Assembly: GCA_002269645.1 (NCBI GenBank)
Contig: NIVC01002913.1
Location: 1-64,000, forward strand
DNA: 64,000 nucleotides
DNA from: Macrostomum lignano
Taxonomy: Eukaryota
Reading direction: 5' to 3'
The notes under the pieces are model-generated. The model was not told the origin of the DNA. It saw only the letters and a list, made by a program, of their open reading frames with translations, and searched no databases. Numbering within the stretch: the first letter of the stretch is position 1; each line of letters begins with the position of its first letter. This document shows, one piece after another, positions 10,108 to 24,720 of the stretch. The position numbers were made by a program, and so were the translations under genes.

Positions 10108-13100
10108 ATGGAACTGCGACAAAAGGCTGCCCTAATGGCACTGAAGGGTGCGCTGGTTCGAGATGTCAATTTTCACGACATCGAAGATTCTCTGTTAAGC
10201 TTTGGTCTCATTTCCCCTGAGGAGAAGCAGATAATTAACAGAGCTGGAAGTACAGATAGACAGACTAGCACATTGGTGGATATTCTTGTGGACAAAAATG
10301 ATGTGAGAACATTCGACTGTCTCATTTCAAGTCTAGAACCTACTTACGATTTTCTGTCCAAGGAGTTGGCTAATTTCCGTGAAAATCCGCAAATTTATCT
10401 GACTAAGTCAACTAAAGATTACGAAGGCGTCTTCATCGAAGGTGGTATTCCTATCACTCCAGTGGGTAACATTGAGCTTAAGTACGTGGCAGAACTCAAG
10501 GAAAGCTTGGTAAAGCTATCGGTCCGCTCTGATGGGGGCTGGATTCTCGTGAAAGGCCACGGTGGTGCTGGAAAGTCGGTAGTTGTTTCTCAAGCAATAA
10601 GAGGCAAGGCCTCTGACGGAAGTCCAATTGCCTCCTATTTTTTCAATCGAGTATTTTGGTTCACAATAGGCAACCTGCGCACCGACGAATTGGAGTCGAT
10701 GCTCCTGGCTAAGATGCAGAACATTTGCATCCGATTGGATCCTAAGCTGCGTGCGTCGCCTCCAACAAGCCTTGATGATGCAAAAAATTTGTTTCGCAAA
10801 ACCATGCTAGAAAAGTACCCGTGCGGGCTTATCGTTCTAGATGACGTTTGGGAGCCAAAAATTTTGCGCTATTTCAATGTTCAAGCAAGGATCGTTGTTA
10901 CATCAAGAAAGGCCGATATTTTCAGCAAAATTCAGCCTGGAGATGCGCAGCGATGCATGAAAATCTCCGTTGATGAAGGTTTACCCGAAGAATTGACTTC
11001 TAAGCTTCTTACTGAGATTATCAACAGCGAAGTTTCACCTGGTCAAGTCTCTGATTCGTTCAACGATGAAGACATGGAGCGTGTTCGAAGGCTTCATTCC
11101 AAGTGCAAAGGAAATCCTTTTATTGTTTCCATCTTCGGTGGCCTTCTTCGTGGCCGACTCTCTCAATTCGAGAGATATTTGAAAAAGTTTAAAACTGATC
11201 TTTTTAAGAAAGTCGACTTAGAGCTGGGTGATTATGAGTATGGAAGCATCATAGATGCCATTCTAGTTAGTATTGACGATCTAGATGAAGAGCAAAAGGA
11301 ACGGTATCTTCACTTGTCTATTTTTCCTGAGGACACTTTTTTATCTGCGCAATTTCTGTCAAAATATTGTTGGCGAAACGAAGATGGCAACCCACTACCT
11401 GTGGATGACTCTTTAGATGTGATGGAAGGATTTGTTCGTCGTTCTATTGCCACGATAGAGAAGTACCGGCCGGATGAAGAGCTCCTTACTCTTCATGACT
11501 TAATTGTGAGTGCCATGAAAAGTGAGTACAAAGAAAAACGAACGAGCTTCAACAATCAGTTTGTTGAAAGAGTGCTCAGCCATCGGGCAACGGTGGGTAG
11601 TTGGATGGATGTTGACAGCAACGATCAAATGCACTATTTGGCCTACAATTTTGTCTACCACTTAGTCTTTTCTGACGCAGTTCCGCTAGACAGAAAGTTA
11701 AGTATCCTGCGTGACTTCGACTTTATTTCGTGGCTTTGCTGTCGGATTGGTGCCGAGAACCTGACGTTTGTTTACCAGTATTCCATTAAGATCCTTACGA
11801 TTGACGAGTCAGCAAGGAAAAGCTTGACAGACTTCGTCGAATTTTTCCGATCGCCGATTCTTCGCATTCAGGCAACCAATTTGGCTACTAGGCGATCTGA
11901 CTCGGCCGTGATTCAACTGGCTCTCACTCTACCAGAAGAGAACTCTGTTCGCGAGTGTGCCGTGGAGGCTGCTAAAAAGCATAGACAGTTTTTCTGCTTT
12001 TACTATTGGCTTAATGTCGACCAGACGGAAGAACAGATCCACAATACATTCAAAGTTGACAGCGATGTTTCTACATTCGCTCTAGATCGTGATTGTAAGC
12101 ACGCTGTTGTTGCAAGCGAATCATCTGCAGTTATTTTAGACCTAAAAACGGGCTTACGCAACTTCCGTGTCCGCAAAGAGGACATGGCCTGCAGCAGTGC
12201 TCGAGGCGATGCACAGGACAGCATTCAAATTGTTTCTGCTCTCTTCAGTCCTGACAATCAATCACTGTTAGTCCTGACTGAATTCGCGCTGTTTCGCTTC
12301 AAACTACCTCCTAGTGCTTTTGAAGTAGGTGTTCGACCTTCCCCAGCTGCGCCTTTACCTTCTGAAAAGGGGAGCTTGCATTTTCCTCAAGGCAGGCCCA
12401 GATCTGGCACAACTGGAAAATCTCCGCTAGAACTCACTCCAAACGAACCGGTCTACAATGAGGAGGAGAAAGAGAATTCTTTTTTTACTGCCATGTGCTT
12501 TGAGTCGGACGCCAAGCTTCTGGTTGGAAGCAGTGATGGAAATATCAAGGTGTTTACCTTGGCTGATCAAGTGACCAACCTAAGCTCCGAATTCGACATA
12601 GATCAGAATATTCCAGCAGGCGCACAGTCCCAGATCAACCACATTGCAGCTTCACAATCAATGTATTCAACTTCAATTGCCGTCTCTGGTCCAAATGACT
12701 GTGTTTACGTCTACAAAAGTCGTTTTGACATTAAGAAGTACTCGGGACACGCTAAGAATTCGAATCCCATTCGCTGCGCTTTTGAGCCACGTCCTGAGCC
12801 GCGATTTGCCGCATCGATTGCAAATAACGAAATTCATCTTTGGCACCCGAAGACTCAACAAAGGTTAGTCCGTGAATTTGGACCAAAGAGCACATCCTTT
12901 ACGAGCATTGCAATCAGCAGTGAAGGTGTTTACATAGCTGTTGGCACTAGCACACGAGCGCACATTTATCTCTACAGGGTAGAGAATCTGACTGAGTCAT
13001 CCTGCAGGCTGCAGCTAGTGGACGAGTTGAATGGCTCAGGTAGCTATACTAAGTGTCTGGCTTTTCAAACTTCGGAAAAGTCATTCTTATATTCAATGTC

Positions 13101-14433
13101 CGAGATGTCAACCGAAGGTGTTCTTACTTGCTGGCGCACCAGTCTCAGTACCACACCTTTTAACGCCGATTATCAGCGTAGTAGCTCTATTTTTTTCGGA
13201 CCGGAAAATGCTACTCTTCGACTGCGAACTGTGATTGATGCTGTCAATGTCAATGGCGAGATTGTTGTCGCTTGCCAATCAGTCCGAAGATCTCTGCTTA
13301 TTCTTAAGTCAAGCGGCAATCACTTGCAAAATGACGAAAGCGGCAAGCTAAGTGGAAAAGAACACCCATTTTCAAAGGCCGCTGCTATTCGTATTGCTCC
13401 TACTGGAAACTACGCCGTCTTTACTTTCTCCAATGAAGTTGTTATCGCAAAAAGATTCAACGATGTCTGGACATTCGATTTCAAACCCATCAATGTTGAA
13501 ATTGTTGACATTGTCTTTCTGCCCAACTGTCAAGGTTTCATCGGATCGAACAGAAGCAACAAGCTTGTTGAGTTTCACGATTCTTTGTGCGTCAAACAAG
13601 TAGATTTGTCTCATAAGCAACTCTATTCTATTGATTCAGTTCAGCCGCTTGCCAATCCCGCCGCTCTATTGTTGTTTGATCGTGGCTGGAACTACTTATT
13701 GCCCGATTCTCTGTGCGTCAATGAGAATTTCGGAGGCTCTATTGGCGATCAACTTCAAGAAAGCCTACTGTGCTGCAACTTTTGTCCCGCTCTTAGTGGT
13801 TTCGTTGCCGGCGGAACAGACCTTGGAAGTTTGATTCTGTGGGAGGTGGCAGCTGATAATACGGCTAGCATTGTGGCAACGCGCAGCCGAATAGAGGATG
13901 AATCCCGCAATTGTCCATTGCGCTGCTTACAGTTTTCGCATCAAATTATCCAGGACTGTTACCTGTTGGCTGCCGCCTTTGACGACAATCGGTTTTCATT
14001 GTGGGCCCTACGAGATGGCCATCTGATCGATTTGGTAAATTGTCAGCCTGTGCAAATCGGCCTCCCACAGCAGCCAAGCAATATCGGCTGCATTGCTTGG
14101 ACTATGCACACAGATGAGGATGGGACGCGTCACCACAAGCTAATCATAGCGTCAGACTGTGTGCACGTGTGCTGCCTGCCCGAGCAGGAAATCCTCGGCG
14201 CGGCGAGATCAGCGCAGCAGACACCAGACTTGAAGCTTGGTACGGTGTCCTTGTACTCGCGTCAGAGTGTCAGCAAAGTTCACGTGCTCAACAATGGCCA
14301 AGATCTGCTGTTTGTTGATAATTCTCACACCGTATTTTGGATGCGCACTTTGCACTCGGAAGATGGAGCTGGACCGGCTAGACAGGAGTGTTCTGTGCCA
14401 TTGATTCCCTTCGGCGAATCCCAAGAATTGTGA
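10108..14433 (+). CDS. APAF1: Apoptotic protease-activating factor 1-like (CARD + NB-ARC + degenerate WD40 propellers), single exon, 1441 aa
   Basis: N-terminal CARD-like ~90 aa. Walker A GHGGAGKS, Walker B LIVLDDVW, CKGNPFIVSIFG (GxP motif) and LHDL (the MHD-equivalent of Apaf-1). A long beta-rich C-terminus follows. AATAAA at ~14611; splice-acceptor-like CAG at 10100 just before the ATG. Confidence 0.92.
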   Translation: MELRQKAALMALKGALVRDVNFHDIEDSLLSFGLISPEEKQIINRAGSTDRQTSTLVDILVDKNDVRTFDCLISSLEPTYDFLSKELANFRENPQIYLTKSTKDYEGVFIEGGIPITPVGNIELKYVAELKESLVKLSVRSDGGWILVKGHGGAGKSVVVSQAIRGKASDGSPIASYFFNRVFWFTIGNLRTDELESMLLAKMQNICIRLDPKLRASPPTSLDDAKNLFRKTMLEKYPCGLIVLDDVWEPKILRYFNVQARIVVTSRKADIFSKIQPGDAQRCMKISVDEGLPEELTSKLLTEIINSEVSPGQVSDSFNDEDMERVRRLHSKCKGNPFIVSIFGGLLRGRLSQFERYLKKFKTDLFKKVDLELGDYEYGSIIDAILVSIDDLDEEQKERYLHLSIFPEDTFLSAQFLSKYCWRNEDGNPLPVDDSLDVMEGFVRRSIATIEKYRPDEELLTLHDLIVSAMKSEYKEKRTSFNNQFVERVLSHRATVGSWMDVDSNDQMHYLAYNFVYHLVFSDAVPLDRKLSILRDFDFISWLCCRIGAENLTFVYQYSIKILTIDESARKSLTDFVEFFRSPILRIQATNLATRRSDSAVIQLALTLPEENSVRECAVEAAKKHRQFFCFYYWLNVDQTEEQIHNTFKVDSDVSTFALDRDCKHAVVASESSAVILDLKTGLRNFRVRKEDMACSSARGDAQDSIQIVSALFSPDNQSLLVLTEFALFRFKLPPSAFEVGVRPSPAAPLPSEKGSLHFPQGRPRSGTTGKSPLELTPNEPVYNEEEKENSFFTAMCFESDAKLLVGSSDGNIKVFTLADQVTNLSSEFDIDQNIPAGAQSQINHIAASQSMYSTSIAVSGPNDCVYVYKSRFDIKKYSGHAKNSNPIRCAFEPRPEPRFAASIANNEIHLWHPKTQQRLVREFGPKSTSFTSIAISSEGVYIAVGTSTRAHIYLYRVENLTESSCRLQLVDELNGSGSYTKCLAFQTSEKSFLYSMSEMSTEGVLTCWRTSLSTTPFNADYQRSSSIFFGPENATLRLRTVIDAVNVNGEIVVACQSVRRSLLILKSSGNHLQNDESGKLSGKEHPFSKAAAIRIAPTGNYAVFTFSNEVVIAKRFNDVWTFDFKPINVEIVDIVFLPNCQGFIGSNRSNKLVEFHDSLCVKQVDLSHKQLYSIDSVQPLANPAALLLFDRGWNYLLPDSLCVNENFGGSIGDQLQESLLCCNFCPALSGFVAGGTDLGSLILWEVAADNTASIVATRSRIEDESRNCPLRCLQFSHQIIQDCYLLAAAFDDNRFSLWALRDGHLIDLVNCQPVQIGLPQQPSNIGCIAWTMHTDEDGTRHHKLIIASDCVHVCCLPEQEILGAARSAQQTPDLKLGTVSLYSRQSVSKVHVLNNGQDLLFVDNSHTVFWMRTLHSEDGAGPARQECSVPLIPFGESQEL

Positions 14434-16325
14434 CAGGTTTCGGTTGCATGAGTTATTAACCTTTTCGGTGGTATGCGATGCCGGGCCTTTGTATTACCCA
14501 TGGCTGCATGTTAATTTTTGTTGTATACTCTCCCGCCATATGCCTAACTAAATGTTGCCATTAAATTGCTTAAAATTGATTGCGCGATCTGCTAATATGA
14601 AAATGAAATCTAATAAAACGTTAGCGCATAAGAACAATGCTTGTAAATGAGATCTGGACGTTTGGAAATGTTGCCACTAATTAAGAGTTGTTAAACGGGG
14701 GTGGAGAGCTAGGCTCACCTCAGATCAGCTCAGGGAAGGGCTCTGTCGCGGGATCTATAACGGCAATTCTACCAGGGGCATAAAGCCCGGGTAGCCAGTA
14801 TTGGGGCTTAGCGGACTTGCCCTAGCAGAGCTCAGAGCTCAACTAATGTTGGGGACACCGAGGACCCTCCAGTAGAATCAGGTGGACGGATGCAAAGACG
14901 GCCCCCAGGCCACCCAACAACAACATAACAGCACCAAAAAGTAAAAGGACGCCGGGCTCAGCCGGTTTTCCCCGATTCGGGACGGACCCTTCCCAGGACT
15001 ATACTCAATCTACAGTCAGTGATGAGAGCAGAGACACAAAAGCAGGGAGACAACCAGAGGAGACAGCAGGGGGGACCAAGGGATCGGATGGAATACCAAA
15101 TAGCAGAGATCTACTCCAAATTTTGGGTTGGCTCATGACCAAAGATAAAACCAATAAAAGAAGGGGAGTTCGAGCATTCATTTTAAGACACTGCCAATCA
15201 TATTCAATGCTTCTACTTTCGTCTATGGTCAAAACAGTCTATGGTGCTTGGCCATACACGCAGTTCAATTTAGACAAGTCATGCCAGCCGTGTAAATGGA
15301 ACTGGAGAGGCCACCAGACTAAATCAATCTAGAATTGGCGCTCCATGGTACTGCAAAGAATCGTGGAGTCAGGCGTGGGGATGTCATATCTGATTGAGCA
15401 CATGTGGTCTGACAGTTTAGTCACAGTCTGTGTCACAAAATAAACAACTTTTGTCTAATGGCTCTGAGTTTCAAGTCTGAATTGAAGTACAACACGGTTT
15501 TGCCCATAGCCAATCGTCGAAGCATTGTGTCGACTATGATTGGCCGCGTCTTAAATATGCTTGAAAAAATATAAATGCTACATCATCCACTTTTAATTTA
15601 AAAAGTGTATTAATTTTACATGTATATTTTTATAAATCTTATTTAATGAAATAATTTTAAATGGCGTGCAAATATTAACAGTTATTATAATCTACAGCGG
15701 TATTGTTGCGAACTAGTCTAATACGAGCTAAATCGATTTTCATTAACCCAGTGCAAAATCTGTTGATTGTTGATTCAGAATTGTTACGTACGCTGTTGCA
15801 TTGCTCATTTTTTATACTAAAATTTTGCCAAAAATTTTACTCTCCCCCCCCCCTAATGCTGTTATTAAAATCTTTACTCACAAATAATCAATATTGCTTT
15901 GTTTTGCCTTTTTCACGTTTAATTAAATCTGTAGTGCCTGCTTCAGCACTGTTTTTAATGCTTTAATTGTTATTGGCATATGAACTTTATAATTTTTTCC
16001 TAGCTTTTACTGTTGTTGTCCCCCCGTATTGATTATTGTAGCGCTTCGATCATTAACTATATCATTCTGCGCGAATGAGTGACTGGTGCCTAATAAAACA
16101 GTGCTAAAACATTTGAAATTAAATTGAGTAAATTTTACCGCTGGCTTATTTAGTTATTTAAGAACTTCTTAACAAAAATGCTAATTGTTGCAGTAATGTT
16201 TTGAGTGCTTCATTTTTTGTGTGGGTAGACTTTATGTAGATTTGTGTTAATAGATTGTTTTAGATTTGTCGGTAGATTCTGTATAGATTAGATATATGTA
16301 TATTCTTCTAAACTGTAGAATCATG

Positions 16326-17034
16326 TGAGTAGATCCTCCTGTAGATTGGATGTGGGTAGATTCTAATGTAGAATGGATATGGGTAGATTCTCATGTAGAA
16401 TGGATATGGGTAGATTCTCCTGTAGATTGGATGTGGGTAGATTCTCATGTAGAATGGATATGGGTAGATTCTCATGTAGAATGGATATGGGTAGATTCTC
16501 ATGTAGAATGGATATGGGTTGATCCTCCTGTAGATTGGATGTGGGTAGATTCTCATGTAGAATGGATATGGGTAGATTCTCATGTAGAATGGATATGGGT
16601 AGATTCTCATGTAGATTGGATGTGGGTAGATTCTCATGTAGAATGGATATGGGTAGATTCTCATGTAGAATGGATATGGGTAGATTCTCATGTAGATTGG
16701 ATGTGGGTAGATTCTCATGTAGAATGGATATGGGTAGATTCTCATGTAGAATGGATATGGGTAGAGTCTCATGTAGATTGGATGTGGGTAGATTCTCATG
16801 TAGAATGTATATGGCTAGATTCTCATGTAGAATGGATATGGGTAGATTCTCATGTAGATTGGATGTGGGTAGATTCTCATGTAGAATGGATATGGGTAGA
16901 TTCTCATGTAGATTGGATGTGGGTAGATTCTCATGTAGATTGGATATGGGTAGATTCTCCTGTAGATTGGATGTGGGTAGATTCTCCTGTAGATTGGATA
17001 TGAGTAGATTCTCCTATAGAATGGATATGGGTAG
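16326..17034. repeat. 27-bp minisatellite (GTAGATTCTCATGTAGAATGGATATGG), left part
   Basis: About 26 tandem units. The array resumes after the LTR element. Confidence 0.95.
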
Positions 17035-17209
17035 TGTAGTGTACGCTCTGCGCGGTAATAATGTACTTGGCTTGGTCGATGAACTAACTCGTAGCAATAC
17101 TCTTATTACGCAATGCTCTTGTGCCTATAAATATATTGAATTGAGCAGTCGGCTCATTTAAGTGCATCGTTTCTCTCGCCAAACTAAATAGCTAGTCTGA
17201 GTCATTACA
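17035..17209 (+). repeat. 5' LTR
   Basis: TG...CA termini, TATAAATA inside, followed directly by the PBS. Confidence 0.95.
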
Positions 17210-17231
17210 TGGCGTCGCAAGCAAACTCTCA

Positions 17232-19904
17232 GTGAGGCCAACCCCCCGCGCACTGATAACGACCGGTGATTCGGCAAATATGGCACAGGCCCTGCAACTC
17301 GCGGCACCAGACGCCTTTGACCTCGAAGGCGATCCTCTGACAAGAGCTCAGCGATGGAAAACCTGGACGCGAAGGTTCAACAGCTACATACGCGCAGCTG
17401 GCATCACAGATGCGACACAGCAGCTGGAGCTCTTAGTTTACACTGCGGGCGAGAAGCTGGAAGACTTCATGGACGATAGCGGCGTCAAGAAAGGAGAGTC
17501 CGCGGAGGAGCTCATCAAAGAGTTGCATGGTATCTTCGACCAAAAGAACAGCGTTGTCTTCCTCAGGTACCAGTTTGAAATATGCCGGCAGGAGGAAGGA
17601 GAGTCAATTGAGGCCTGGTATCATCGGCTACGCAAGGCTGCGGACCAATGCACATTCGGCGAACTCCGAGACTCGCTCATCAGGGACAAGATCGTGGCTC
17701 ATTACCGGTCCGAGAGGATCAGGAGGGAACTCCTGCAGCTCAACGATGTCTCCTTAGACGACGTTTTGAAGCGAATCCGAGCGAGGGAGGCAGCGGAGCA
17801 GCAGGCCCAGGCCATGGAGATCGGCGCCGCAGCCGACACGGGCCATCCTTCCGCTTCGAATGTGGCGGCGCTGCGTCCACCTCGTAACCGACCATCCCAT
17901 ACAACCAGGCCGGCTGCCGCGGCAAGAGACAGCGGCATCAACTGCGATCGCTGCGGGCGACCAGGACATCAGACGTGCGAGGCAGCCCGTAACAAGGCGT
18001 GTCGACGCTGCGGAAAGATGGGTCATTTCGCTCGGGCGTGTCGAGGAGCAGCTAAAGTCCCTCTGAGGACCGTTGACGAGCCGCAGGAGGAGGCTCCGCC
18101 GGGTCGAGTCGAATATCTGCAAGACGACCCCATCGAGCACGAGCTATTCACCCTGAGGAACTACGGCTCTACTTGGACGCCTGCGACAATTAACGGGCTC
18201 AAGACAAAGGTGCTCATCGACAGCGGCGCGGCCTGCAACATCATCGACAGGGCGGCCTACGACAGGATGCCGCAAAAAGCCGCGCTGCAGCCCGCCAGCG
18301 ACAAGGTCTACCCATACGGAAGCCAAGAGCCGCTGAGATTGCTGGGCAAGGCAGACCTGCATGTCAGCGTGTTCGAGATCCACGAGACACTACCGTTCTT
18401 GGTGCTCGACGGTGAGGGCGCTTGCATCATTGGCCGGAGAAGCGCTGAAAGACTTCAGATTCTGCGAGTCGGCCCGGAGAACAAGGTGGCATGCCAGATG
18501 CGTCCGTCTCCCGAGGTCTCGCTAGACAGCATGCTAACAGGGATCCCAAAGGACGTCCTACATGCGCCGGGGGCACCGGCCCTGCACGAACTCCTAACGG
18601 AGAACGCACTAGTCTTCAGCGGAATCGGCAGGCTCAAAAACTATGCCGCCCGCATCTTCCTGGAGGAGGGAGCCAGGCCGGTCTGTCATCCCCCATCAAG
18701 GGTGCCAATACATCTCGCACAGGCAGTCGACGCCGAGCTGCAGTGCCTCGAGGACCAAGGCATCATCGAGCCGGTGGAAGGCCCCTGTCCGTGGGTAGCC
18801 CGCATCGTCGTCGTGCCCAAGCAGACTCCAGGCGAGATCAGGATTACGCAGGACTTGAGAGACCTGAACAAGTCGGTCATTAGAGAGCGGCATCTCATCC
18901 CGACATTCGAGGAGGTGACGGGAGACATGGCAGGAGCGCAGCTATTCTCAGAGCTCGACATCGCGAAGGCATTTTATCAAATCCCAGTCGCCGACGAATG
19001 CCGCCATCTTCTGACTTTTTCGACACCACGAGGCCTGCGGCGGCTGACACGGCTCTGTATGGGACTGTCTACGGCCCAGGAAATTCTCTAGGCGGTCATG
19101 TCATCCGTGCTAGCTGGACTCCCGAAAGTAAAATGGATTCACGACGACATCATCGTGTATGGGCACAGCGTGGCGGAGCACCACATCAACCTGCAGGCAT
19201 GTCTGCGACGACTGGCACAGCACGGGCTGACGCTGAATCCGTTAAAATGCAAGCTCGCCCGTACTGAGGTCACGTTTATGGGGATGCAGCTGTCCAGTGA
19301 AGGTGTCAGACCAACCCAGTCCAAGTTGGAAGCCATCCACGCATTTGCCGAGCCAAAGACCGCCACAGAGGTGCGCTCGTTCCTAGGCCTGGTCAACTAT
19401 CTGGCCTCATTCACCCCCGGGCTGGCGGATGTAGCGAGGCCACTGCGCAATCTGACTAGTAAAGGCGAGCCCTGGGCATGGACCGACCTCGAGAAACGAG
19501 CTTTTGACGACGTGAAGACCCGGATTGCGACCAGCGGCACCCTCGCCTTCTTCAACCACCGCCTAGCGACGCAACTCATCGTCGACGCCGGCCCAGCGGG
19601 CCTGGGCGCGATCCTAACGCAGACGCAAGCGGACGGCACCAACCGGCCTGTCGCGTACGCCAGCCGGACGCTATCCGATGTTGAGCAGCGCTACTCCCAG
19701 ACTGAGGAGGCGCTGGCCGTCAAATACGGCTGCTTGAAATTTCAGTACTATCTGCACGGCGCTCCGACATTTACGGTGGTGACAGACCACAAGCCGCTCA
19801 TCGCATTGTTCAGCAGTGGCTCAAGGCCTCCCCCGAGGATCGAAAGAATTGCGCTGCGACCACACCCCCGAGAGGCCAAGGTGAAAGTGAACTATAGGGT
19901 TTAA
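17232..19904 (+). pseudogene. gag-pol (capsid, two zinc knuckles, protease, RT, RNase H); premature stop at 19089-19091; integrase deleted
   Basis: CxxCxxxxH knuckles (CDRCGRPGH, CRRCGKMGHFARAC), protease LIDSGA, RT LDIAKAFYQ and WIHDDII, RNase H VDAGPAGLGAIL..YASRTL..TDHKPL. ORFs 17232-19091 and 19098-19904 share a frame across a TAG. After IERIALR the sequence jumps to a C-terminal-like PHPREAKVKVNYRV; no HHCC or DDE integrase motif is present. Confidence 0.9.
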
Positions 19905-20133
19905 CTATAACTCGCGCTTGGCAGACTGACGCTAATATCTTGTTTGATTTTGCTTTTGCGTCTTGAGATTGCGGATAGAAAATTGTTCATTCTCCAGCTA
20001 AGGCATTACATGTACAATCAGTAACATTTTCTGTATTGATGTTTCTTCTTTGCAAGATTTTACTCGTATTTGTGGTAATTTTCAGTTTTTAAAAAACCTT
20101 TTGCAGTAAAACTTAATCCAAAATGAGGAGAGA

Positions 20134-20308
20134 TGTAGTGTACGCTCTGCGCGGTAATAATGTACTTGGCTTGGTCGATGAACTAACTCGTAGCAATACT
20201 CTTATTACGCAATGCTCTCGTGCCTATAAATATATTGAATTGAGCAGTCGGCTCATTTAAGTGCATCGTTTCTCTCGCCAAACTAAATAGCTAGTCTGAG
20301 TCATTACA
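20134..20308 (+). repeat. 3' LTR
   Basis: 174/175 identical to the 5' LTR. Confidence 0.95.
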
Positions 20309-20476
20309 GGTAGATTCTCCTATAGAATGGATATGGGTAGATTCTCCTGTAGAATGGATATGGGTAGATTCTCCTGTAGAATGGATATGGGTAGATTCTC
20401 CTATAGATTCGTATGGGCAGATTCTTCTGTAGATTAAATGAAGGTAGATTCTCATGTAGATTGTATGTGGGTAGAT
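20309..20476. repeat. 27-bp minisatellite, right part
   Basis: Same unit as 16326-17034, decaying rightwards. Confidence 0.9.
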
Positions 20477-20582
20477 TTCGCTGAGTAGGGATCGATATTA
20501 TCGAGGCCTATTTCAGTCTATTGACATGGGTGGTAATGAAGCCCAGCCATTGCAATATTACTGATGCCTCGATCACAATCAG

Positions 20583-20834
20583 TTTCACTGCAGCAGAAGT
20601 GGCGGCGCTATCGCTCGCTGCCTGCGCCAGGCGCTGGCGTCAAATCATCCGCGCCGATGCAAATCAATAGTCAGGCGGCGTATCGAGCGCGCCACTACGG
20701 AATTCGATTTGACCGCCGGTCGCCGGTCGACGTCGGCCAGGCAGCGGCTGTACGCCTGCGGCTGGCCGGTGACCGGCGCCCTGGGCATCGCCCGGTTCGC
20801 CCAGCCCACGCCAGGCAGGCCGCTGCGTGAACAG
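20583..20834 (+). CDS. RCC1L: RCC1-like mitochondrial protein (WBSCR16/RCC1L), coding exon 1 (5' boundary inferred)
   Basis: A frame not reported in the ORF track reads FHCSRSGGAIARCLRQALAS...RQRLYACGWPVTGALGIARFAQPTPGRPLREQ and resembles the RCC1L N-terminus (RVFVWGFSFSGALG). Phase-0 donor CAG|GTCGGT at 20834/20835; acceptor CAG at 20580-20582. Confidence 0.7.
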
Positions 20835-20875
20835 GTCGGTTAAATCTCTGACTGCTGAACCCTGTCAGGTAGTAA

Positions 20876-21607
20876 TCCCTCCTGACACATACTGATCCCT
20901 TCTGACACATGCTGATTCCTCCTGATACATGCTGATCCCTCCTGACACATGCTGATCCCTCCTGACACATGCTGATTCCTCCTGACACATGCTGATCCCT
21001 CCTGACACATACTGATCCCTTCTGACACATGCTGATCCCTCCTGACACATGCTGATCCCTCCTGACACATGCTGATCCCTCCTGACACATGCTGATCTCT
21101 TCTGACGCATGCTGATCTCTTCTGACACATGCTGGTCCCTTCTGACACATGCTGGTCCTTCCTGACACACACTGCTCTTTCCTGACACATGCTGGTCCTT
21201 CCTGACACACACTGCTCTTTCCTGACACATGCTGATCCCTCCTGACACATGCTGATCCCTACTGACACATGCTGATCCCTTCTGACACATGCTGATCCCT
21301 CCTGACACATGCTGGTCCCTTCTGACCCATGCTGATCCCTCCTGACACATGCTGATCCCTACTGACACATGCTGATCCCTTCTGACACATGCTGATCCCT
21401 CCTGACTCATGCTGGTCCCTTCTGACCCATGCTGATCCCTCCTGACACATGCTGATCCCTCCTGACACATGCTGATCCCTCCTGACACATGCTGATCCCT
21501 ACTGACACATGCTGATCCCTCCTGACACATGCTGATCCCTTTCTGACATGCTGATCCCTTTCTGACACATGCTAATTCCTCCTGACACATGCTGATCCCT
21601 CCTGACA
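20876..21607. repeat. 20-bp intronic minisatellite (CCTGACACATGCTGATCCCT)
   Basis: About 36 tandem units filling RCC1L intron 1. Confidence 0.95.
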
Positions 21608-21718
21608 ATTAGTGATTTCTTTTGACATGGCCAGCCGGTTTTTGTGTTAAATTTGAGCCTTCGAAAAACCCTGGTCGTTCTACTGACATTAGCTCCGCCC
21701 TCGCCACCCACCGCGCAG

Positions 21719-22459
21719 GTGCTGGCCCCCGCCCGTCTAGCCGAATTGTCGTCTCGCGGCCTCAGCGTCGTAGATGGCGCCGCCGGCTACGGCTTCACTC
21801 TGCTGGCCTGCCGCCGCGGCGCCAACCGCGGCATCCTGATGGCCTGCGGCGCCAATAACGACGGCCAGTTGGGGCCGCTGCAAACCAGAGTCTCCGACGG
21901 CGCCGACCCCGCCCAGGACATATTATTGTCGTCGTCATTAAACTCGTCGTCTTCAGGCGTCGCCAGGCACCGTCTGGTGCTCCGGCCTACTCAGGTCCGC
22001 CTTCCGGTGCACCCGGCCGAGCTGGCGTCCGGCCGGTGCCGCCTGCTGCGCTTGTCGGCCGGCCGGGCGCACTCCCTGCTGGTGACCAGTCACGGCGCCT
22101 ACGCATTCGGCAACAATGCCTTCGGACAGTGCGGCCGGCCGGCCGGCGGCGAATCCGCTGCCGTGGCCAGGCTGGCGCTGCCCTGCCCGCCCGAGTCTGT
22201 GCAGCGGCTGGTCTGCGGCCAGGACAGCACCTACCTGCTGACTGCCGACGGCCGAGTCTACAGCTGCGGCCTCGGCGCCGACGGCCAGCTCGGCTTGGGC
22301 GGCTTCGACAACTCCGACCGATTTCAGCTGGTTGACGTCGGCGCCCCGGTGGCCGATCTGGCCTGCCGAGCCGACACCGTGCTGGCGCTGGGCGAGGACG
22401 GCTGCGTCTACGGCTGGGGCAACTCCGAGTACGGACAGCTGGGCACCGATGCGCTGCAG
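21719..22459 (+). CDS. RCC1L: RCC1L coding exon 2 (RCC1 repeats)
   Basis: [77 protein letters not shown] and [12 protein letters not shown]. Branch-point-like TACTGAC at 21681, acceptor CAG at 21716-21718, phase-0 donor at 22460. Confidence 0.9.
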
Positions 22460-22486
22460 GTCAGCTTGGAGTCTGACTGACACTGT

Positions 22487-22500
22487 GAGACAGACAGACC

Positions 22501-22585
<85 letters not shown>

Positions 22586-22678
22586 CACAGACAGATAGAC
22601 ACACAGACAGACAGACAGACAGACCAGACAGACAGGCAGACAGACAAACAGGCAGACAGACAGACAGACAGACAGATG

Positions 22679-22722
<44 letters not shown>

Positions 22723-22794
22723 GTCAGTCAGAAAGACAGACAGACACACAGACAGATAGACACACAGACAGACAGACAGACAGACAGACAGACC

Positions 22795-22843
<49 letters not shown>

Positions 22844-22850
22844 GTCAGAA

Positions 22851-22885
<35 letters not shown>

Positions 22886-22887
22886 TG

Positions 22888-22955
<68 letters not shown>

Positions 22956-23146
22956 GTCAGACAAACAGACAGACAGTCAGACAGACAGACAGAGACAGAC
23001 AGACACCAAGACAGACACTAAGACAGACATCAAGACAGACACCAAGACAGACACTAAGACAGACACCAAGACAGACACCAAGACAGACACCAAGACAGAC
23101 ACAGACAGACACCAAGACAGACACCAAGACAGACACCAAGACAGAC

Positions 23147-23195
<49 letters not shown>

Positions 23196-23354
23196 TGGAC
23201 AGACAGACAGACAGACAGATGGACAGACAGACAGACAGACAGATGGACAGACAGACAGACAGACACACATACAGACAGACAGACAGACACACAGACAGAT
23301 AGACACACAGACAGACAGACAGACAGACAGACCAGACAGACAGGCAGACAGATG

Positions 23355-23391
<37 letters not shown>

Positions 23392-23454
23392 TCAGAAAGA
23401 CAGACAGACAGACAGACAGACAGACCGACAGACAGACAGACAGACAGACAGATG

Positions 23455-23526
<72 letters not shown>

Positions 23527-23701
23527 GTCAGACAAACAGACAGACAGTCAGACAGACAGACAGAGACAGAGACAGACAGACACCAAGACAGACACTAAGA
23601 CAGACATCAAGACAGACACCAAGACAGACACCAAGACAGACACCAAGACAGACACCAAGACAGACAAACAGACAGACAGTCAGAAAGACAGACAGACAGT
23701 C

Positions 23702-23736
<35 letters not shown>

Positions 23737-23862
23737 GACAGACAGACAGACACCAAGACAGACACTAAGACAGACACCAAGACAGACACCAAGACAGACA
23801 CTAAGACAGACACCAAGACAGACACCAAGACAGACACCAAAACAGACACAGACAGACACTAA
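22487..23862. repeat. (CAGA)n microsatellite with CAGACACCAAGA 12-mer blocks
   Basis: About 1.4 kb filling RCC1L intron 2. Confidence 0.95.
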
Positions 23863-23899
23863 GACATTAAGTAATGGCAACAACAATGCAATGCGGCAG

Positions 23900-24343
23900 G
23901 TGGACCGGCCTATCCGATTAGATCACGTGATGCACTCAGTTCTATCAGCCAATCAGCAAGTTGACCGGGTGGCCGCGGTCGGCTCAATGTGCGCCCTGCT
24001 GACCCGCTGCGGCCGAGTCTGGGTCTGGGGCTACGGCCGGCTTGGCCTCGGGCCGGACGTCACCCAGCTGGCCGAGCCAAGGCCAATTCCGGACGGTCTG
24101 TTCGGCCGGACGCAGTTGGCTAAAGATGTGCGCATTGTCCAGCTGGACGCGGGCATGTACCATTTTGCCGCAGTCACCAATAGCGGCTCGCTGTACACCT
24201 GGGGAGATCAACGGTCGGGCAGTCTGGGCCTCGGTCACGACGACAACCAGTGCTTCCCGCTGCAGGTGTCCCTGGCCTGCCGGGTGCAGTGGACTCGATG
24301 CGGCGTTGATCACACTATCATTTGCGGCACCGCATTTGCCTGA
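23900..24343 (+). CDS. RCC1L: RCC1L terminal coding exon
   Basis: VWVWGYGRLGLGP, LDAGMYHFAAVTNSGSLYTWG, GSLGLGHDDNQCFPLQV, CGVDHT. Phase-0 acceptor CAG at 23897-23899. The spliced product is about 479 aa. Confidence 0.9.
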   Translation: MDRPIRLDHVMHSVLSANQQVDRVAAVGSMCALLTRCGRVWVWGYGRLGLGPDVTQLAEPRPIPDGLFGRTQLAKDVRIVQLDAGMYHFAAVTNSGSLYTWGDQRSGSLGLGHDDNQCFPLQVSLACRVQWTRCGVDHTIICGTAFA

Positions 24344-24419
24344 CCTGCTTGGTTAATACCTGGCATTTTGGCTCAGCTTTTGTGTGATTTTGGCAGTTGT
24401 GTGAACTCGATTGCAGTCA

Positions 24420-24720
24420 ACTGGATTCACGCAACTGTGTATGCATTGCAACTGGGTTCACACAACTGTCGTATGTATTGCAACTGGGTTCACACAACTG
24501 TCGTATGTATTGCAACTGTGTTCACACACTGTTGTATGGATTGCAACTGGGTTCACACAACTGTGTATGCATTGCAACTGAGTTCACACAACTGTGTATG
24601 CATTGCAACTGTGTTCACACACTGTTGTATGGGTTGCAACTGGGTTCACACAACTGTCGTATGGATTGCAACTGGGTTCACACAACTGTCGTATGGATTG
24701 CAACTGAGTTCACACACTGT
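24420..24720. repeat. 32-bp minisatellite (GCAACTGGGTTCACACAACTGTCGTATGTATT)
   Basis: About 9 units just 3' of the RCC1L stop codon. Confidence 0.9.

What the first reader, a model, noticed from the sequence alone, without database searches (positions are those of the whole stretch)
20526..20834. RCC1L has no genomic start codon in frame: candidate for initiation at a spliced-leader-donated AUG
Seen: the frame homologous to RCC1L is open from 20565 to the donor at 20834 with no ATG, and is closed upstream by TGA at 20562. An AG acceptor at 20581-20582 lies exactly in phase. Adding ATG there gives MFHCSRSGGAIARCLRQALASNHPRRCKSIVRRR, an Arg/Ser/Ala-rich, acid-free stretch typical of mitochondrial presequences. 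Established: RCC1L/WBSCR16 is a mitochondrial protein, and flatworm spliced leaders end in AUG that can act as the initiator. Inference: this gene's translation and mitochondrial targeting depend on SL trans-splicing. The immediate upstream region is an LTR element and minisatellite, with no obvious cis exon.
Basis: partly seen in the sequence, partly recalled or inferred. Interest (0 to 1): 0.7.

Follow-up and report, generated by a model that had tools for sequence, protein, structure and literature searches.

The report
Spliced-leader AUG starts flatworm RCC1L
A mitochondrial-type RCC1L gene of the flatworm Macrostomum lignano has no start codon in its own DNA and almost certainly takes one from the AUG at the end of the trans-spliced leader; this is a real but already known flatworm mechanism.

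Summary
The window is positions 1-64000 of Macrostomum lignano GenBank contig NIVC01002913.1. The RCC1L frame is closed by TGA at 20562-64 and then runs to the GT donor at 20835 without an in-frame ATG. An AG at 20581-82 lies in phase.

The published M. lignano spliced leader (SL) ends in ATG. The public, RNA-seq-based gene model BOX15_Mlig030897g4 is a 5'-partial CDS that starts exactly at 20583. That is the expected signature of an SL site when the SL has been trimmed and transcripts have been cut at SL-read peaks.

Four paralogous loci keep the same stop, the same lack of ATG and the same AG|TTTCAC junction. Sequence upstream of the junction diverges about ten times faster than sequence downstream.

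The folded propeller begins at residue 55, inside exon 1, so translation must start in the ATG-less interval. The resulting 55-residue N-terminus is basic, free of acidic residues for 35 residues, and within the length range of orthologues.

I could not see SL-junction reads directly. A nearby acceptor that matches the consensus better (20592-93) is out of phase. [quoted passage not shown] 2006), so this is a new member of a known kind and of modest interest.

The parts
20562..20564 (+). In-frame TGA that closes the RCC1L frame upstream; conserved in all 5 paralogous copies
20526..20564 (+). Short in-frame upstream ORF (MGGNEAQPLQYY*). It is not conserved: group-B paralogues stop earlier at a TAG. 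It lies in the outron and is removed by trans-splicing.
20581..20582 (+). AG trans-splice acceptor (context AATCAG|TTTCAC), in phase 0 with the RCC1L frame. The GenBank 5'-partial CDS starts at the next base.
20583..20834 (+). Exon 1, 84 codons. It encodes a 55-residue basic N-terminal extension when the SL Met is counted, and then the first strand of the propeller (RLYACGWPVTGALGI). There is no ATG in frame.
20592..20599 (+). Three tandem alternative AGs (20592/3 CTGCAG, which matches the consensus; 20595/6; 20598/9). All are out of phase and would give SL-AUG ORFs of 77-79 aa ending at TGA 20828-30.
20835..21718 (+). Intron 1 (GT..AG), mostly a minisatellite with a 20-bp unit at 20875-21607
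21719..22459 (+). Exon 2, 247 codons, phase 0. It contains the first genomic in-frame ATG (Met125, MACGANN, at 21842).
22460..23899 (+). Intron 2 (GT..AG), mostly (AGAC)n at 22488-23858
23900..24343 (+). Exon 3 coding part, ending in stop TGA at 24341-43. The end equals the end of the GenBank CDS.
17035..20308 (+). LTR retroelement private to this copy, inserted in the upstream minisatellite. It has 175-bp LTRs and a GGTAG target-site duplication, and its 3' end lies 275 bp 5' of the acceptor.

Best explanation
The RCC1L pre-mRNA of M. lignano is SL trans-spliced at the AG at 20581-82. This removes the outron, which carries the in-frame TGA, a short upstream ORF and the out-of-frame ATG at 20564. 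It joins the 35-nt spliced leader, whose last three bases are AUG, directly to TTTCAC.

The SL AUG is then the only AUG in frame and acts as the initiator. The product is a 479-aa protein, MFHCSRSGG.... Its first ~55 residues form a basic presequence without acidic residues, followed by a seven-bladed RCC1-like propeller orthologous to mitochondrial RCC1L/WBSCR16.

Without trans-splicing at this site, the first usable AUG is Met125 in exon 2. Starting there would lose the presequence and more than one blade.

Shown: the sequence facts, the species, the SL sequence, the annotated transcript start and the conservation pattern. Inferred: actual SL junction use, translation from the SL AUG, and mitochondrial import.
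For: - Species and gene: the spliced protein is 100% identical to PAA54412.1 BOX15_Mlig030897g4 'partial' [M. lignano], 478 aa, beginning FHCS. The next hits are RCC1L orthologues at 35-40% identity. Pfam finds the RCC1-like domain. PDB 5xgs, RCC1L, matches at E 5e-64.
- Annotated start: the GenBank CDS spans record and window positions 20583-24343, so it starts at the base after the AG.
- How the annotation was made: SL reads were trimmed and mapped, transcripts were cut at SL peaks (TBONE), and ORFs were called with TransDecoder (PMC5730564). A 5'-partial ORF that starts at a splice acceptor is what this procedure gives for an ORF initiated by the SL AUG.
- A second locus, L001 (Mlig031987g2), starts at the same junction.
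- The SL ends in ATG (PMC8629364; PMC5173321). Wiberg et al. note this ATG as a start codon in Macrostomum (PMC10468722).
- Five paralogous copies all keep the TGA, the lack of ATG and AG|TTTCAC.
- Between paralogue groups, the ~140 nt 5' of the junction carry about 12 substitutions plus 15-bp and 6-bp indels. The 252 nt of exon 1 carry only 5 substitutions. Three of the 5 are synonymous in the RCC1L frame and none in the +2 frame.
- The folded domain starts at residue 55 in exon 1 (AF2; alignment).
- The N-terminal length of 55 aa falls within the 45-83 aa of orthologues. The first 35 aa have 9 R/K and 0 D/E.
- SL-AUG initiation is established in flatworms (Cheng et al. 2006, as cited in PMC9851317, PMC12582326 and PMC3510090).
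Against: - I could retrieve no read or transcript showing the SL-ATG|TTTCAC junction. The 90% cluster contains only genome-derived proteins, an N-terminal peptide search returned nothing, and a junction scan of metagenome contigs found 0 matches.
- The acceptor context AATCAG matches only the CAG of the published trans-splice motif [T/C]TNCAG. CTGCAG at 20592-93 matches that motif perfectly but is out of phase. The motif covers only 44% of SL sites.
- The GenBank model of paralogue L002 starts 18 nt further 3', just after GGAAG|T. This could mean an out-of-phase alternative acceptor or simply a ragged 5' end.
- The presequence call rests on composition and a low-confidence helix prediction, not on a validated predictor.
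Confidence: 0.77

Rival explanations
1. The gene is trans-spliced mainly at one of the tandem out-of-phase AGs (20592/3, 20595/6, 20598/9). The SL AUG then opens a 77-79-aa alternative-frame ORF. Full-length RCC1L would come only from a minor in-phase isoform, or the choice of acceptor would act as a translational on/off switch.
For: CTGCAG|C at 20592-93 is a perfect match to the published M. lignano trans-splice acceptor motif [T/C]TNCAG and follows a TTTCACT pyrimidine-rich run. The GenBank model of paralogue L002 starts immediately 3' of GGAAG|T. One search gives the resulting ORFs.
Against: Two independent gene models start exactly at the in-phase junction, and none starts at 20594 or 20597. 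Substitutions between paralogues are 3/5 synonymous in the RCC1L frame and 0/5 in the alternative frame. The conserved propeller needs exon 1 translated in the RCC1L frame.
Confidence: 0.1
2. Translation starts at a near-cognate non-AUG codon in exon 1, for example CUG at 20622 or 20634, independently of the SL AUG.
For: In-frame near-cognate codons exist between the stop and the first conserved residue. A CUG-20622 start would still leave a basic N-terminus.
Against: This is not needed, because an AUG is supplied in phase by the SL at the annotated transcript start. None of the near-cognate codons has a notable context. The mechanism is rare compared with documented SL-AUG use in flatworms.
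Confidence: 0.05
3. An unannotated upstream cis exon carrying an ATG is spliced to the AG at 20581-82.
For: The AG could in principle serve cis-splicing. Sharing of acceptors between cis- and trans-splicing is reported in parasitic flatworms (PMC12582326). About 1.8 kb of unique sequence lies between the upstream gene and the minisatellite.
Against: None of the four RNA-seq-derived models of the paralogues has an upstream exon. The N-terminal length already matches orthologues. The region immediately upstream is minisatellite, and in this copy it also holds a 3.3-kb LTR insertion.
Confidence: 0.05
4. The missing ATG is an assembly error, or this copy is a 5'-truncated pseudogene created by the retroelement insertion.
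For: An ATG at 20564 would come into frame with a 1-nt indel. A retroelement lies 275 bp upstream.
Against: Five separately assembled loci have identical frame relations, and four of them lack the retroelement. All exons and splice sites are intact, and the substitution pattern is that of a coding sequence.
Confidence: 0.02

Closest known systems
Flatworm mRNAs initiated from the spliced-leader 3'-terminal AUG (Cheng, Cohen, Ndegwa & Davis 2006, J Biol Chem 281:733; called 'slORFs' in PMC9851317)
   Same: The SL ends in AUG. The acceptor places that AUG in frame with the major conserved ORF. There is no genomic AUG upstream of the conserved N-terminus. The gene models appear 5'-partial when the SL is trimmed. 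Echinococcus examples include mitochondrial proteins (an NADH-ubiquinone oxidoreductase subunit and COX6B) with the SL AUG in frame (PMC3510090).
   Different: The species is a free-living basal flatworm (Macrostomorpha), not a neodermatan. As far as I found, this gene has not been described as such a case. Here the SL Met heads a presumptive mitochondrial presequence. Translation from the SL AUG is not shown experimentally for this gene.
Human/mouse RCC1L (WBSCR16), a mitochondrial RCC1-like protein (PDB 5xgs; PMC7423155)
   Same: It has an RCC1-like seven-bladed propeller, with 35-40% identity to metazoan orthologues over about 90% of its length. It has an N-terminal extension of similar length before the first blade.
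   Different: Vertebrate and other orthologues encode their own ATG. The M. lignano protein has an extra low-confidence Ser-rich loop at residues ~142-167. Mitochondrial localisation has not been tested.
Alternative SL acceptor use that alters ORFs or targeting signals (Trypanosoma brucei SL trapping, PMC2916883; S. mansoni, PMC5832876)
   Same: Closely spaced alternative AGs would change which ORF is read, or whether a targeting signal is present.
   Different: Only one indirect hint of alternative use here, the start of the L002 model. No read counts are available.

Membership tests
SL-AUG-initiated flatworm mRNA (slORF) | The species has an SL RNA whose exon ends in AUG | tested here: met
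   Species identified as M. lignano by a 100% protein match and by contig identity. The published SL ends ...TTGCATG (PMC8629364; PMC5173321).
SL-AUG-initiated flatworm mRNA (slORF) | The mRNA is SL trans-spliced at a defined acceptor | tested here: inconclusive
   Indirect only. The RNA-seq-based GenBank CDS is 5'-partial and starts at the base after AG 20581-82, in an annotation that cuts transcripts at SL-read peaks. The same is true at paralogue L001. I could not retrieve any SL-junction read.
SL-AUG-initiated flatworm mRNA (slORF) | The SL AUG is in frame with the major, conserved ORF | tested here: met
   Phase 0 at 20583. SL-ATG plus the exons gives a 479-aa RCC1L.
SL-AUG-initiated flatworm mRNA (slORF) | No genomic in-frame AUG is available upstream of the conserved N-terminal region, so the SL AUG is required | tested here: met
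   TGA at 20562 and no in-frame ATG to 20834. The first genomic Met is residue 125. The conserved, structured region starts at residue 55. The same holds in 5 paralogous copies.
SL-AUG-initiated flatworm mRNA (slORF) | Translation actually initiates at the SL AUG in vivo | not testable with these tools
   This needs ribosome profiling, N-terminal proteomics or reporter assays.
RCC1L / WBSCR16 orthologue | RCC1-like beta-propeller whose best matches are RCC1L rather than RCC1, HERC or RPGR | tested here: met
   Top hits are all RCC1L/WBSCR16. PF25390, PF00415 and PF13540 match. PDB 5xgs (RCC1L) scores 220 bits, against 121 bits or less for RPGR, UVR8 and HERC. The AF2 model has pTM 0.81.
RCC1L / WBSCR16 orthologue | N-terminal mitochondrial targeting presequence | tested here: inconclusive
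   The first 35 aa have 9 R/K and 0 D/E. Helices are predicted at 8-21 and 24-41 with pLDDT below 50. Length is similar to orthologues. No validated predictor (TargetP or MitoFates) was available.

The most novel reading that the evidence does not exclude
The cluster of one in-phase AG (20581/2) and three out-of-phase AGs (20592-99) within 18 nt is used as a switch. The choice of trans-splice acceptor would decide whether the SL AUG opens full-length mitochondrial RCC1L or a 77-79-aa dead-end ORF. SL trans-splicing would then control the translation of a mitoribosome-assembly factor rather than merely enable it. The different start of the paralogue L002 model would be the first hint.
Probability: 0.08. 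Interest if true: 0.55.

Novelty: new member of a known kind. Interest (0 to 1): 0.25.

Why it matters
This is a clean, checkable example that flatworm gene models marked 'partial' can be complete once the spliced-leader AUG is added. That matters for annotating M. lignano, a transgenic model organism, where 30-39% of genes are reported as trans-spliced.

It also bears on designing transgenes or knock-ins for such genes: a construct lacking the SL acceptor would need an artificial ATG.

It shows that a protein's organelle targeting signal can depend on trans-splicing. It does not reveal a new mechanism.

Tried and rejected
- Direct RNA evidence. The 90%-identity protein cluster holds only 6 genome-derived M. 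lignano entries and no transcript-derived member, and the exact 479-aa M-started protein is not in the collection.
- A peptide search with the SL-encoded prefix plus the N-terminus returned nothing. It did not even return P0001, so this is a limit of the tool and not evidence.
- A scan of metagenome contigs for SL 3' end + 0-20 nt + TGGCGGCGCTAT found 0 matches, as expected for that collection.
- Supplementary files of PMC8629364 and PMC5730564 hold no per-gene trans-splicing tables mentioning Mlig030897, 031987, 017935 or 031244.
- Cheng et al. 2006 is not in the held library, so I cite it through papers that summarise it.
- There is no SL-like sequence in the window that could be a cis exon.
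- Operon with the upstream NB-ARC/WD40 gene: considered and not supported. In uninserted paralogues the gap is about 2.6 kb, of which about 0.73 kb is minisatellite. This exceeds the 1-kb repeat-adjusted threshold of PMC8629364.
- Statistical rarity of the ATG-less frame: rejected as an argument, since P is about 0.44-0.51 by shuffling.

Full report
**What is in the sequence**

Translating 20526-20834 gives MGGNEAQPLQYY*CLDHNQFHCSRSGGAIARCLRQ...GRPLREQ.
- The stop is TGA at 20562-64.
- From 20565 to 20834 the frame is open and contains no ATG.
- The only ATGs in that interval, at 20564 and 20657, are in the +2 frame.
- 20835 begins a GT donor.
- The AG at 20581-82 is followed by TTTCAC in phase 0.
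- Three more AGs follow closely (20592/3, 20595/6, 20598/9), and all are out of phase. The AG at 20629/30 is in phase again.

The gene has three coding exons, each a multiple of three in length and bounded by canonical GT..AG:

| Exon | Coordinates |
|---|---|
| 1 | 20583-20834 |
| 2 | 21719-22459 |
| 3 | 23900-24343 |

Both introns consist mostly of tandem repeats.

The absence of ATG is not in itself statistically remarkable. Shuffled versions of the interval lack an in-frame ATG 44-51% of the time. The argument is structural, not statistical.

**Whose gene it is**

The spliced protein is 100% identical over its whole length to PAA54412.1, 'hypothetical protein BOX15_Mlig030897g4, partial [Macrostomum lignano]', which is 478 aa.
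- The next hits are RCC1L/WBSCR16 orthologues of annelids, molluscs and insects at 35-40% identity.
- Pfam finds the RCC1-like domain from residue 56 to the end.
- The best solved structure is RCC1L itself, 5xgs, at E 5e-64.
- The encoding contig is NIVC01002913.1, and window coordinates equal record coordinates. The deposited CDS spans 20583-24343.

**Why the annotated start matters**

The Mlig_3_7 annotation was built from RNA-seq in four steps (PMC5730564):
1. Reads carrying the spliced leader were trimmed.
2. The trimmed reads were mapped.
3. The resulting peaks were used by the TBONE pipeline to cut transcripts at trans-splice sites.
4. ORFs were then called with TransDecoder.

TransDecoder begins a 5'-partial ORF at the first codon of the transcript.
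- A transcript reaching further upstream would have yielded ...CLDHNQFHCS.
- A transcript starting at 20594 would have yielded RSGGAI.
- A CDS that starts with F at 20583, the base after an AG, means the transcript model starts at that acceptor.

The same holds for a second locus under a different transcript cluster name, Mlig031987g2 (L001).

The M. lignano SL is CGGTCTCTTACTGCGAAGACTCAATTTATTGCATG (PMC8629364; the same 3' end appears in PMC5173321). Joined at 20583, its terminal ATG is in frame and gives a 479-aa protein, MFHCSRSGG.... [quoted passage not shown]

**Evidence from paralogues**

M. lignano is a neopolyploid. Four further loci carry the gene: L001, L002, L004 and L005.
- All five copies keep the in-frame TGA, the lack of an in-frame ATG and the AG|TTTCACTGCAGC junction.
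- This excludes an assembly indel that would bring the ATG at 20564 into frame.
- It also excludes truncation of this copy by the nearby retroelement, because the other four copies lack that element.

Comparing the two sequence groups (window/L001/L004 against L002/L005):

| Region | Length | Changes between groups |
|---|---|---|
| 5' of the junction | ~140 nt | about a dozen substitutions, a 15-bp indel, and a 6-bp indel directly abutting ATCAG |
| Exon 1 | 252 nt | 5 substitutions; 3 synonymous in the RCC1L frame, 0 in the +2 frame |

The change in constraint falls at the proposed acceptor, and the RCC1L frame is the one under selection from at least codon 10.

**Why translation must start in the ATG-less interval**

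- In the alignment with 12 orthologues, the nearly invariant block R-V-Y-x-W-G...T-G-A-L-G corresponds to residues 56-69, which are encoded in exon 1.
- The AlphaFold model has mean pLDDT 80.9 and pTM 0.81. Residues 1-51 are of low confidence, with helices at 8-21 and 24-41. The first propeller strand is at 55-61, with pLDDT above 80.
- The first genomic in-frame Met is residue 125 in exon 2. That is what the GenBank model of paralogue L004 falls back on, giving 354 aa. Starting there would delete the N-terminal extension and several strands.
- With the SL Met, the pre-domain extension is 55 residues, against 45-83 in orthologues. Its first 35 residues hold 9 Arg/Lys and no Asp/Glu. This is compatible with a matrix-targeting presequence.
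- RCC1L is a mitochondrial protein in mammals (PMC7423155).
- I had no validated targeting predictor, so targeting is inferred.

**What weakens the case**

I could not obtain a single read or cDNA showing the junction.
- The protein cluster holds only genome-derived entries.
- The peptide search failed technically.
- A junction scan of metagenome contigs was negative, as expected for that collection.
- The supplementary tables held as text do not list these genes.

The published trans-splice acceptor motif is [T/C]TNCAG, found at 44% of sites.
- The proposed acceptor, AATCAG, matches only the CAG.
- CTGCAG at 20592/3 is a perfect match but out of phase. It would make the SL AUG open a 79-aa ORF ending at TGA 20828-30.

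The model of paralogue L002 starts 18 nt downstream, right after GGAAG|T. This is either an alternative out-of-phase acceptor or a ragged 5' end. The L005 model starts at a position with no AG and is clearly ragged. Some heterogeneity in acceptor use therefore cannot be excluded.

**Rival explanations**

| Rival | Estimated probability |
|---|---|
| Out-of-phase acceptor dominant, or acting as a switch | ~0.10 |
| Near-cognate initiation (CUG at 20622 or 20634) | ~0.05 |
| Hidden upstream cis exon (no model has one, and the N-terminal length already fits) | ~0.05 |
| Assembly error or pseudogene (refuted by five concordant copies) | ~0.02 |

**Comparison with what is known**

All reported flatworm SLs end in AUG, and this AUG can act as the initiator methionine (Cheng et al. 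2006, as summarised in PMC12582326).
- In Schistosoma mansoni the SL AUG is in frame in 28% of trans-spliced transcripts, and more than 40 cDNAs need it for translation in the correct frame (PMC9851317).
- In Echinococcus granulosus, several cDNAs need the SL AUG to match conserved N-termini. The listed in-frame examples include mitochondrial proteins (PMC3510090).

The present case meets the sequence-level criteria for this class: an SL ending in AUG, an in-phase acceptor, no alternative AUG, and a conserved N-terminus that needs it. The RNA-level criterion is met only indirectly, and the translational criterion is untested. I found no paper describing SL-AUG dependence gene by gene in M. lignano, nor for RCC1L.

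**Verdict**

The mechanism is well known, so this is a new member of a known kind. Its practical value lies in annotation and in transgene design for M. lignano. Interest is 0.25.

Noticed in passing
window 17035-20308: A 3,274-bp LTR retroelement on the + strand. Its 175-bp LTRs are 99% identical (17035-17209 and 20134-20308), it has TG..CA ends and a 5-bp GGTAG target-site duplication. The internal gag (zf-CCHC), RT and RNase H reading frame is split into two ORFs (17232-19091 and 19098-19904), and no integrase domain was detected. It sits inside the 27-bp minisatellite and is absent from the four paralogous loci, so it is a recent insertion private to this copy. The 3' LTR carries a TATAAATA and ends 275 bp upstream of the RCC1L acceptor, so it could read out into the outron.
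   Followed up: partly
window 16314-17034 and 20309-20477; 20875-21607; 22488-23858; 24418-24720: The gene is embedded in tandem repeats: a 27-bp minisatellite upstream, a 20-bp unit repeated about 37 times filling intron 1, (AGAC)n of about 344 copies filling intron 2, and a 31-bp unit repeated about 10 times just after the stop codon. The repeat arrays differ in length between paralogues.
   Followed up: partly
window 10108-14433 (+): An intronless 1441-aa ORF with an ATG start, carrying NB-ARC plus WD40 beta-propeller hits (an Apaf-1-like architecture). It is on the same strand and is the conserved upstream neighbour of RCC1L in at least four of the five loci (the L004 listing shows no upstream gene call, though the upstream DNA aligns). 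The gap to RCC1L is about 2.6 kb in uninserted copies, too long to count as an operon by the published 1-kb repeat-adjusted criterion.
   Followed up: partly
L002 3990-4001, L005 6001, L004 6001: The GenBank models of the paralogues start at different points: after GGAAG|T in L002, at a non-AG position in L005, and at the internal Met125 in L004. The same gene is thus annotated with four different N-termini in one genome, and none of them has the likely true Met.
   Followed up: partly
window 14006-16875 vs L001/L002: Upstream of the minisatellite the window copy is closer to L002/L005 (97.1%) than to L001/L004 (about 95%). In exon 1 and its immediate 5' flank it groups with L001/L004. This suggests recombination or gene conversion between homeologous copies, with the breakpoint around the minisatellite.
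   Followed up: no
window 20564-20830 (+2 frame): An 88-codon ORF starting at genomic ATG 20564 overlaps exon 1 and ends 4 nt before the donor. It is the frame that out-of-phase SL acceptors would open. Its substitution pattern (0/5 synonymous) and the GC-rich composition suggest a chance ORF.
   Followed up: yes
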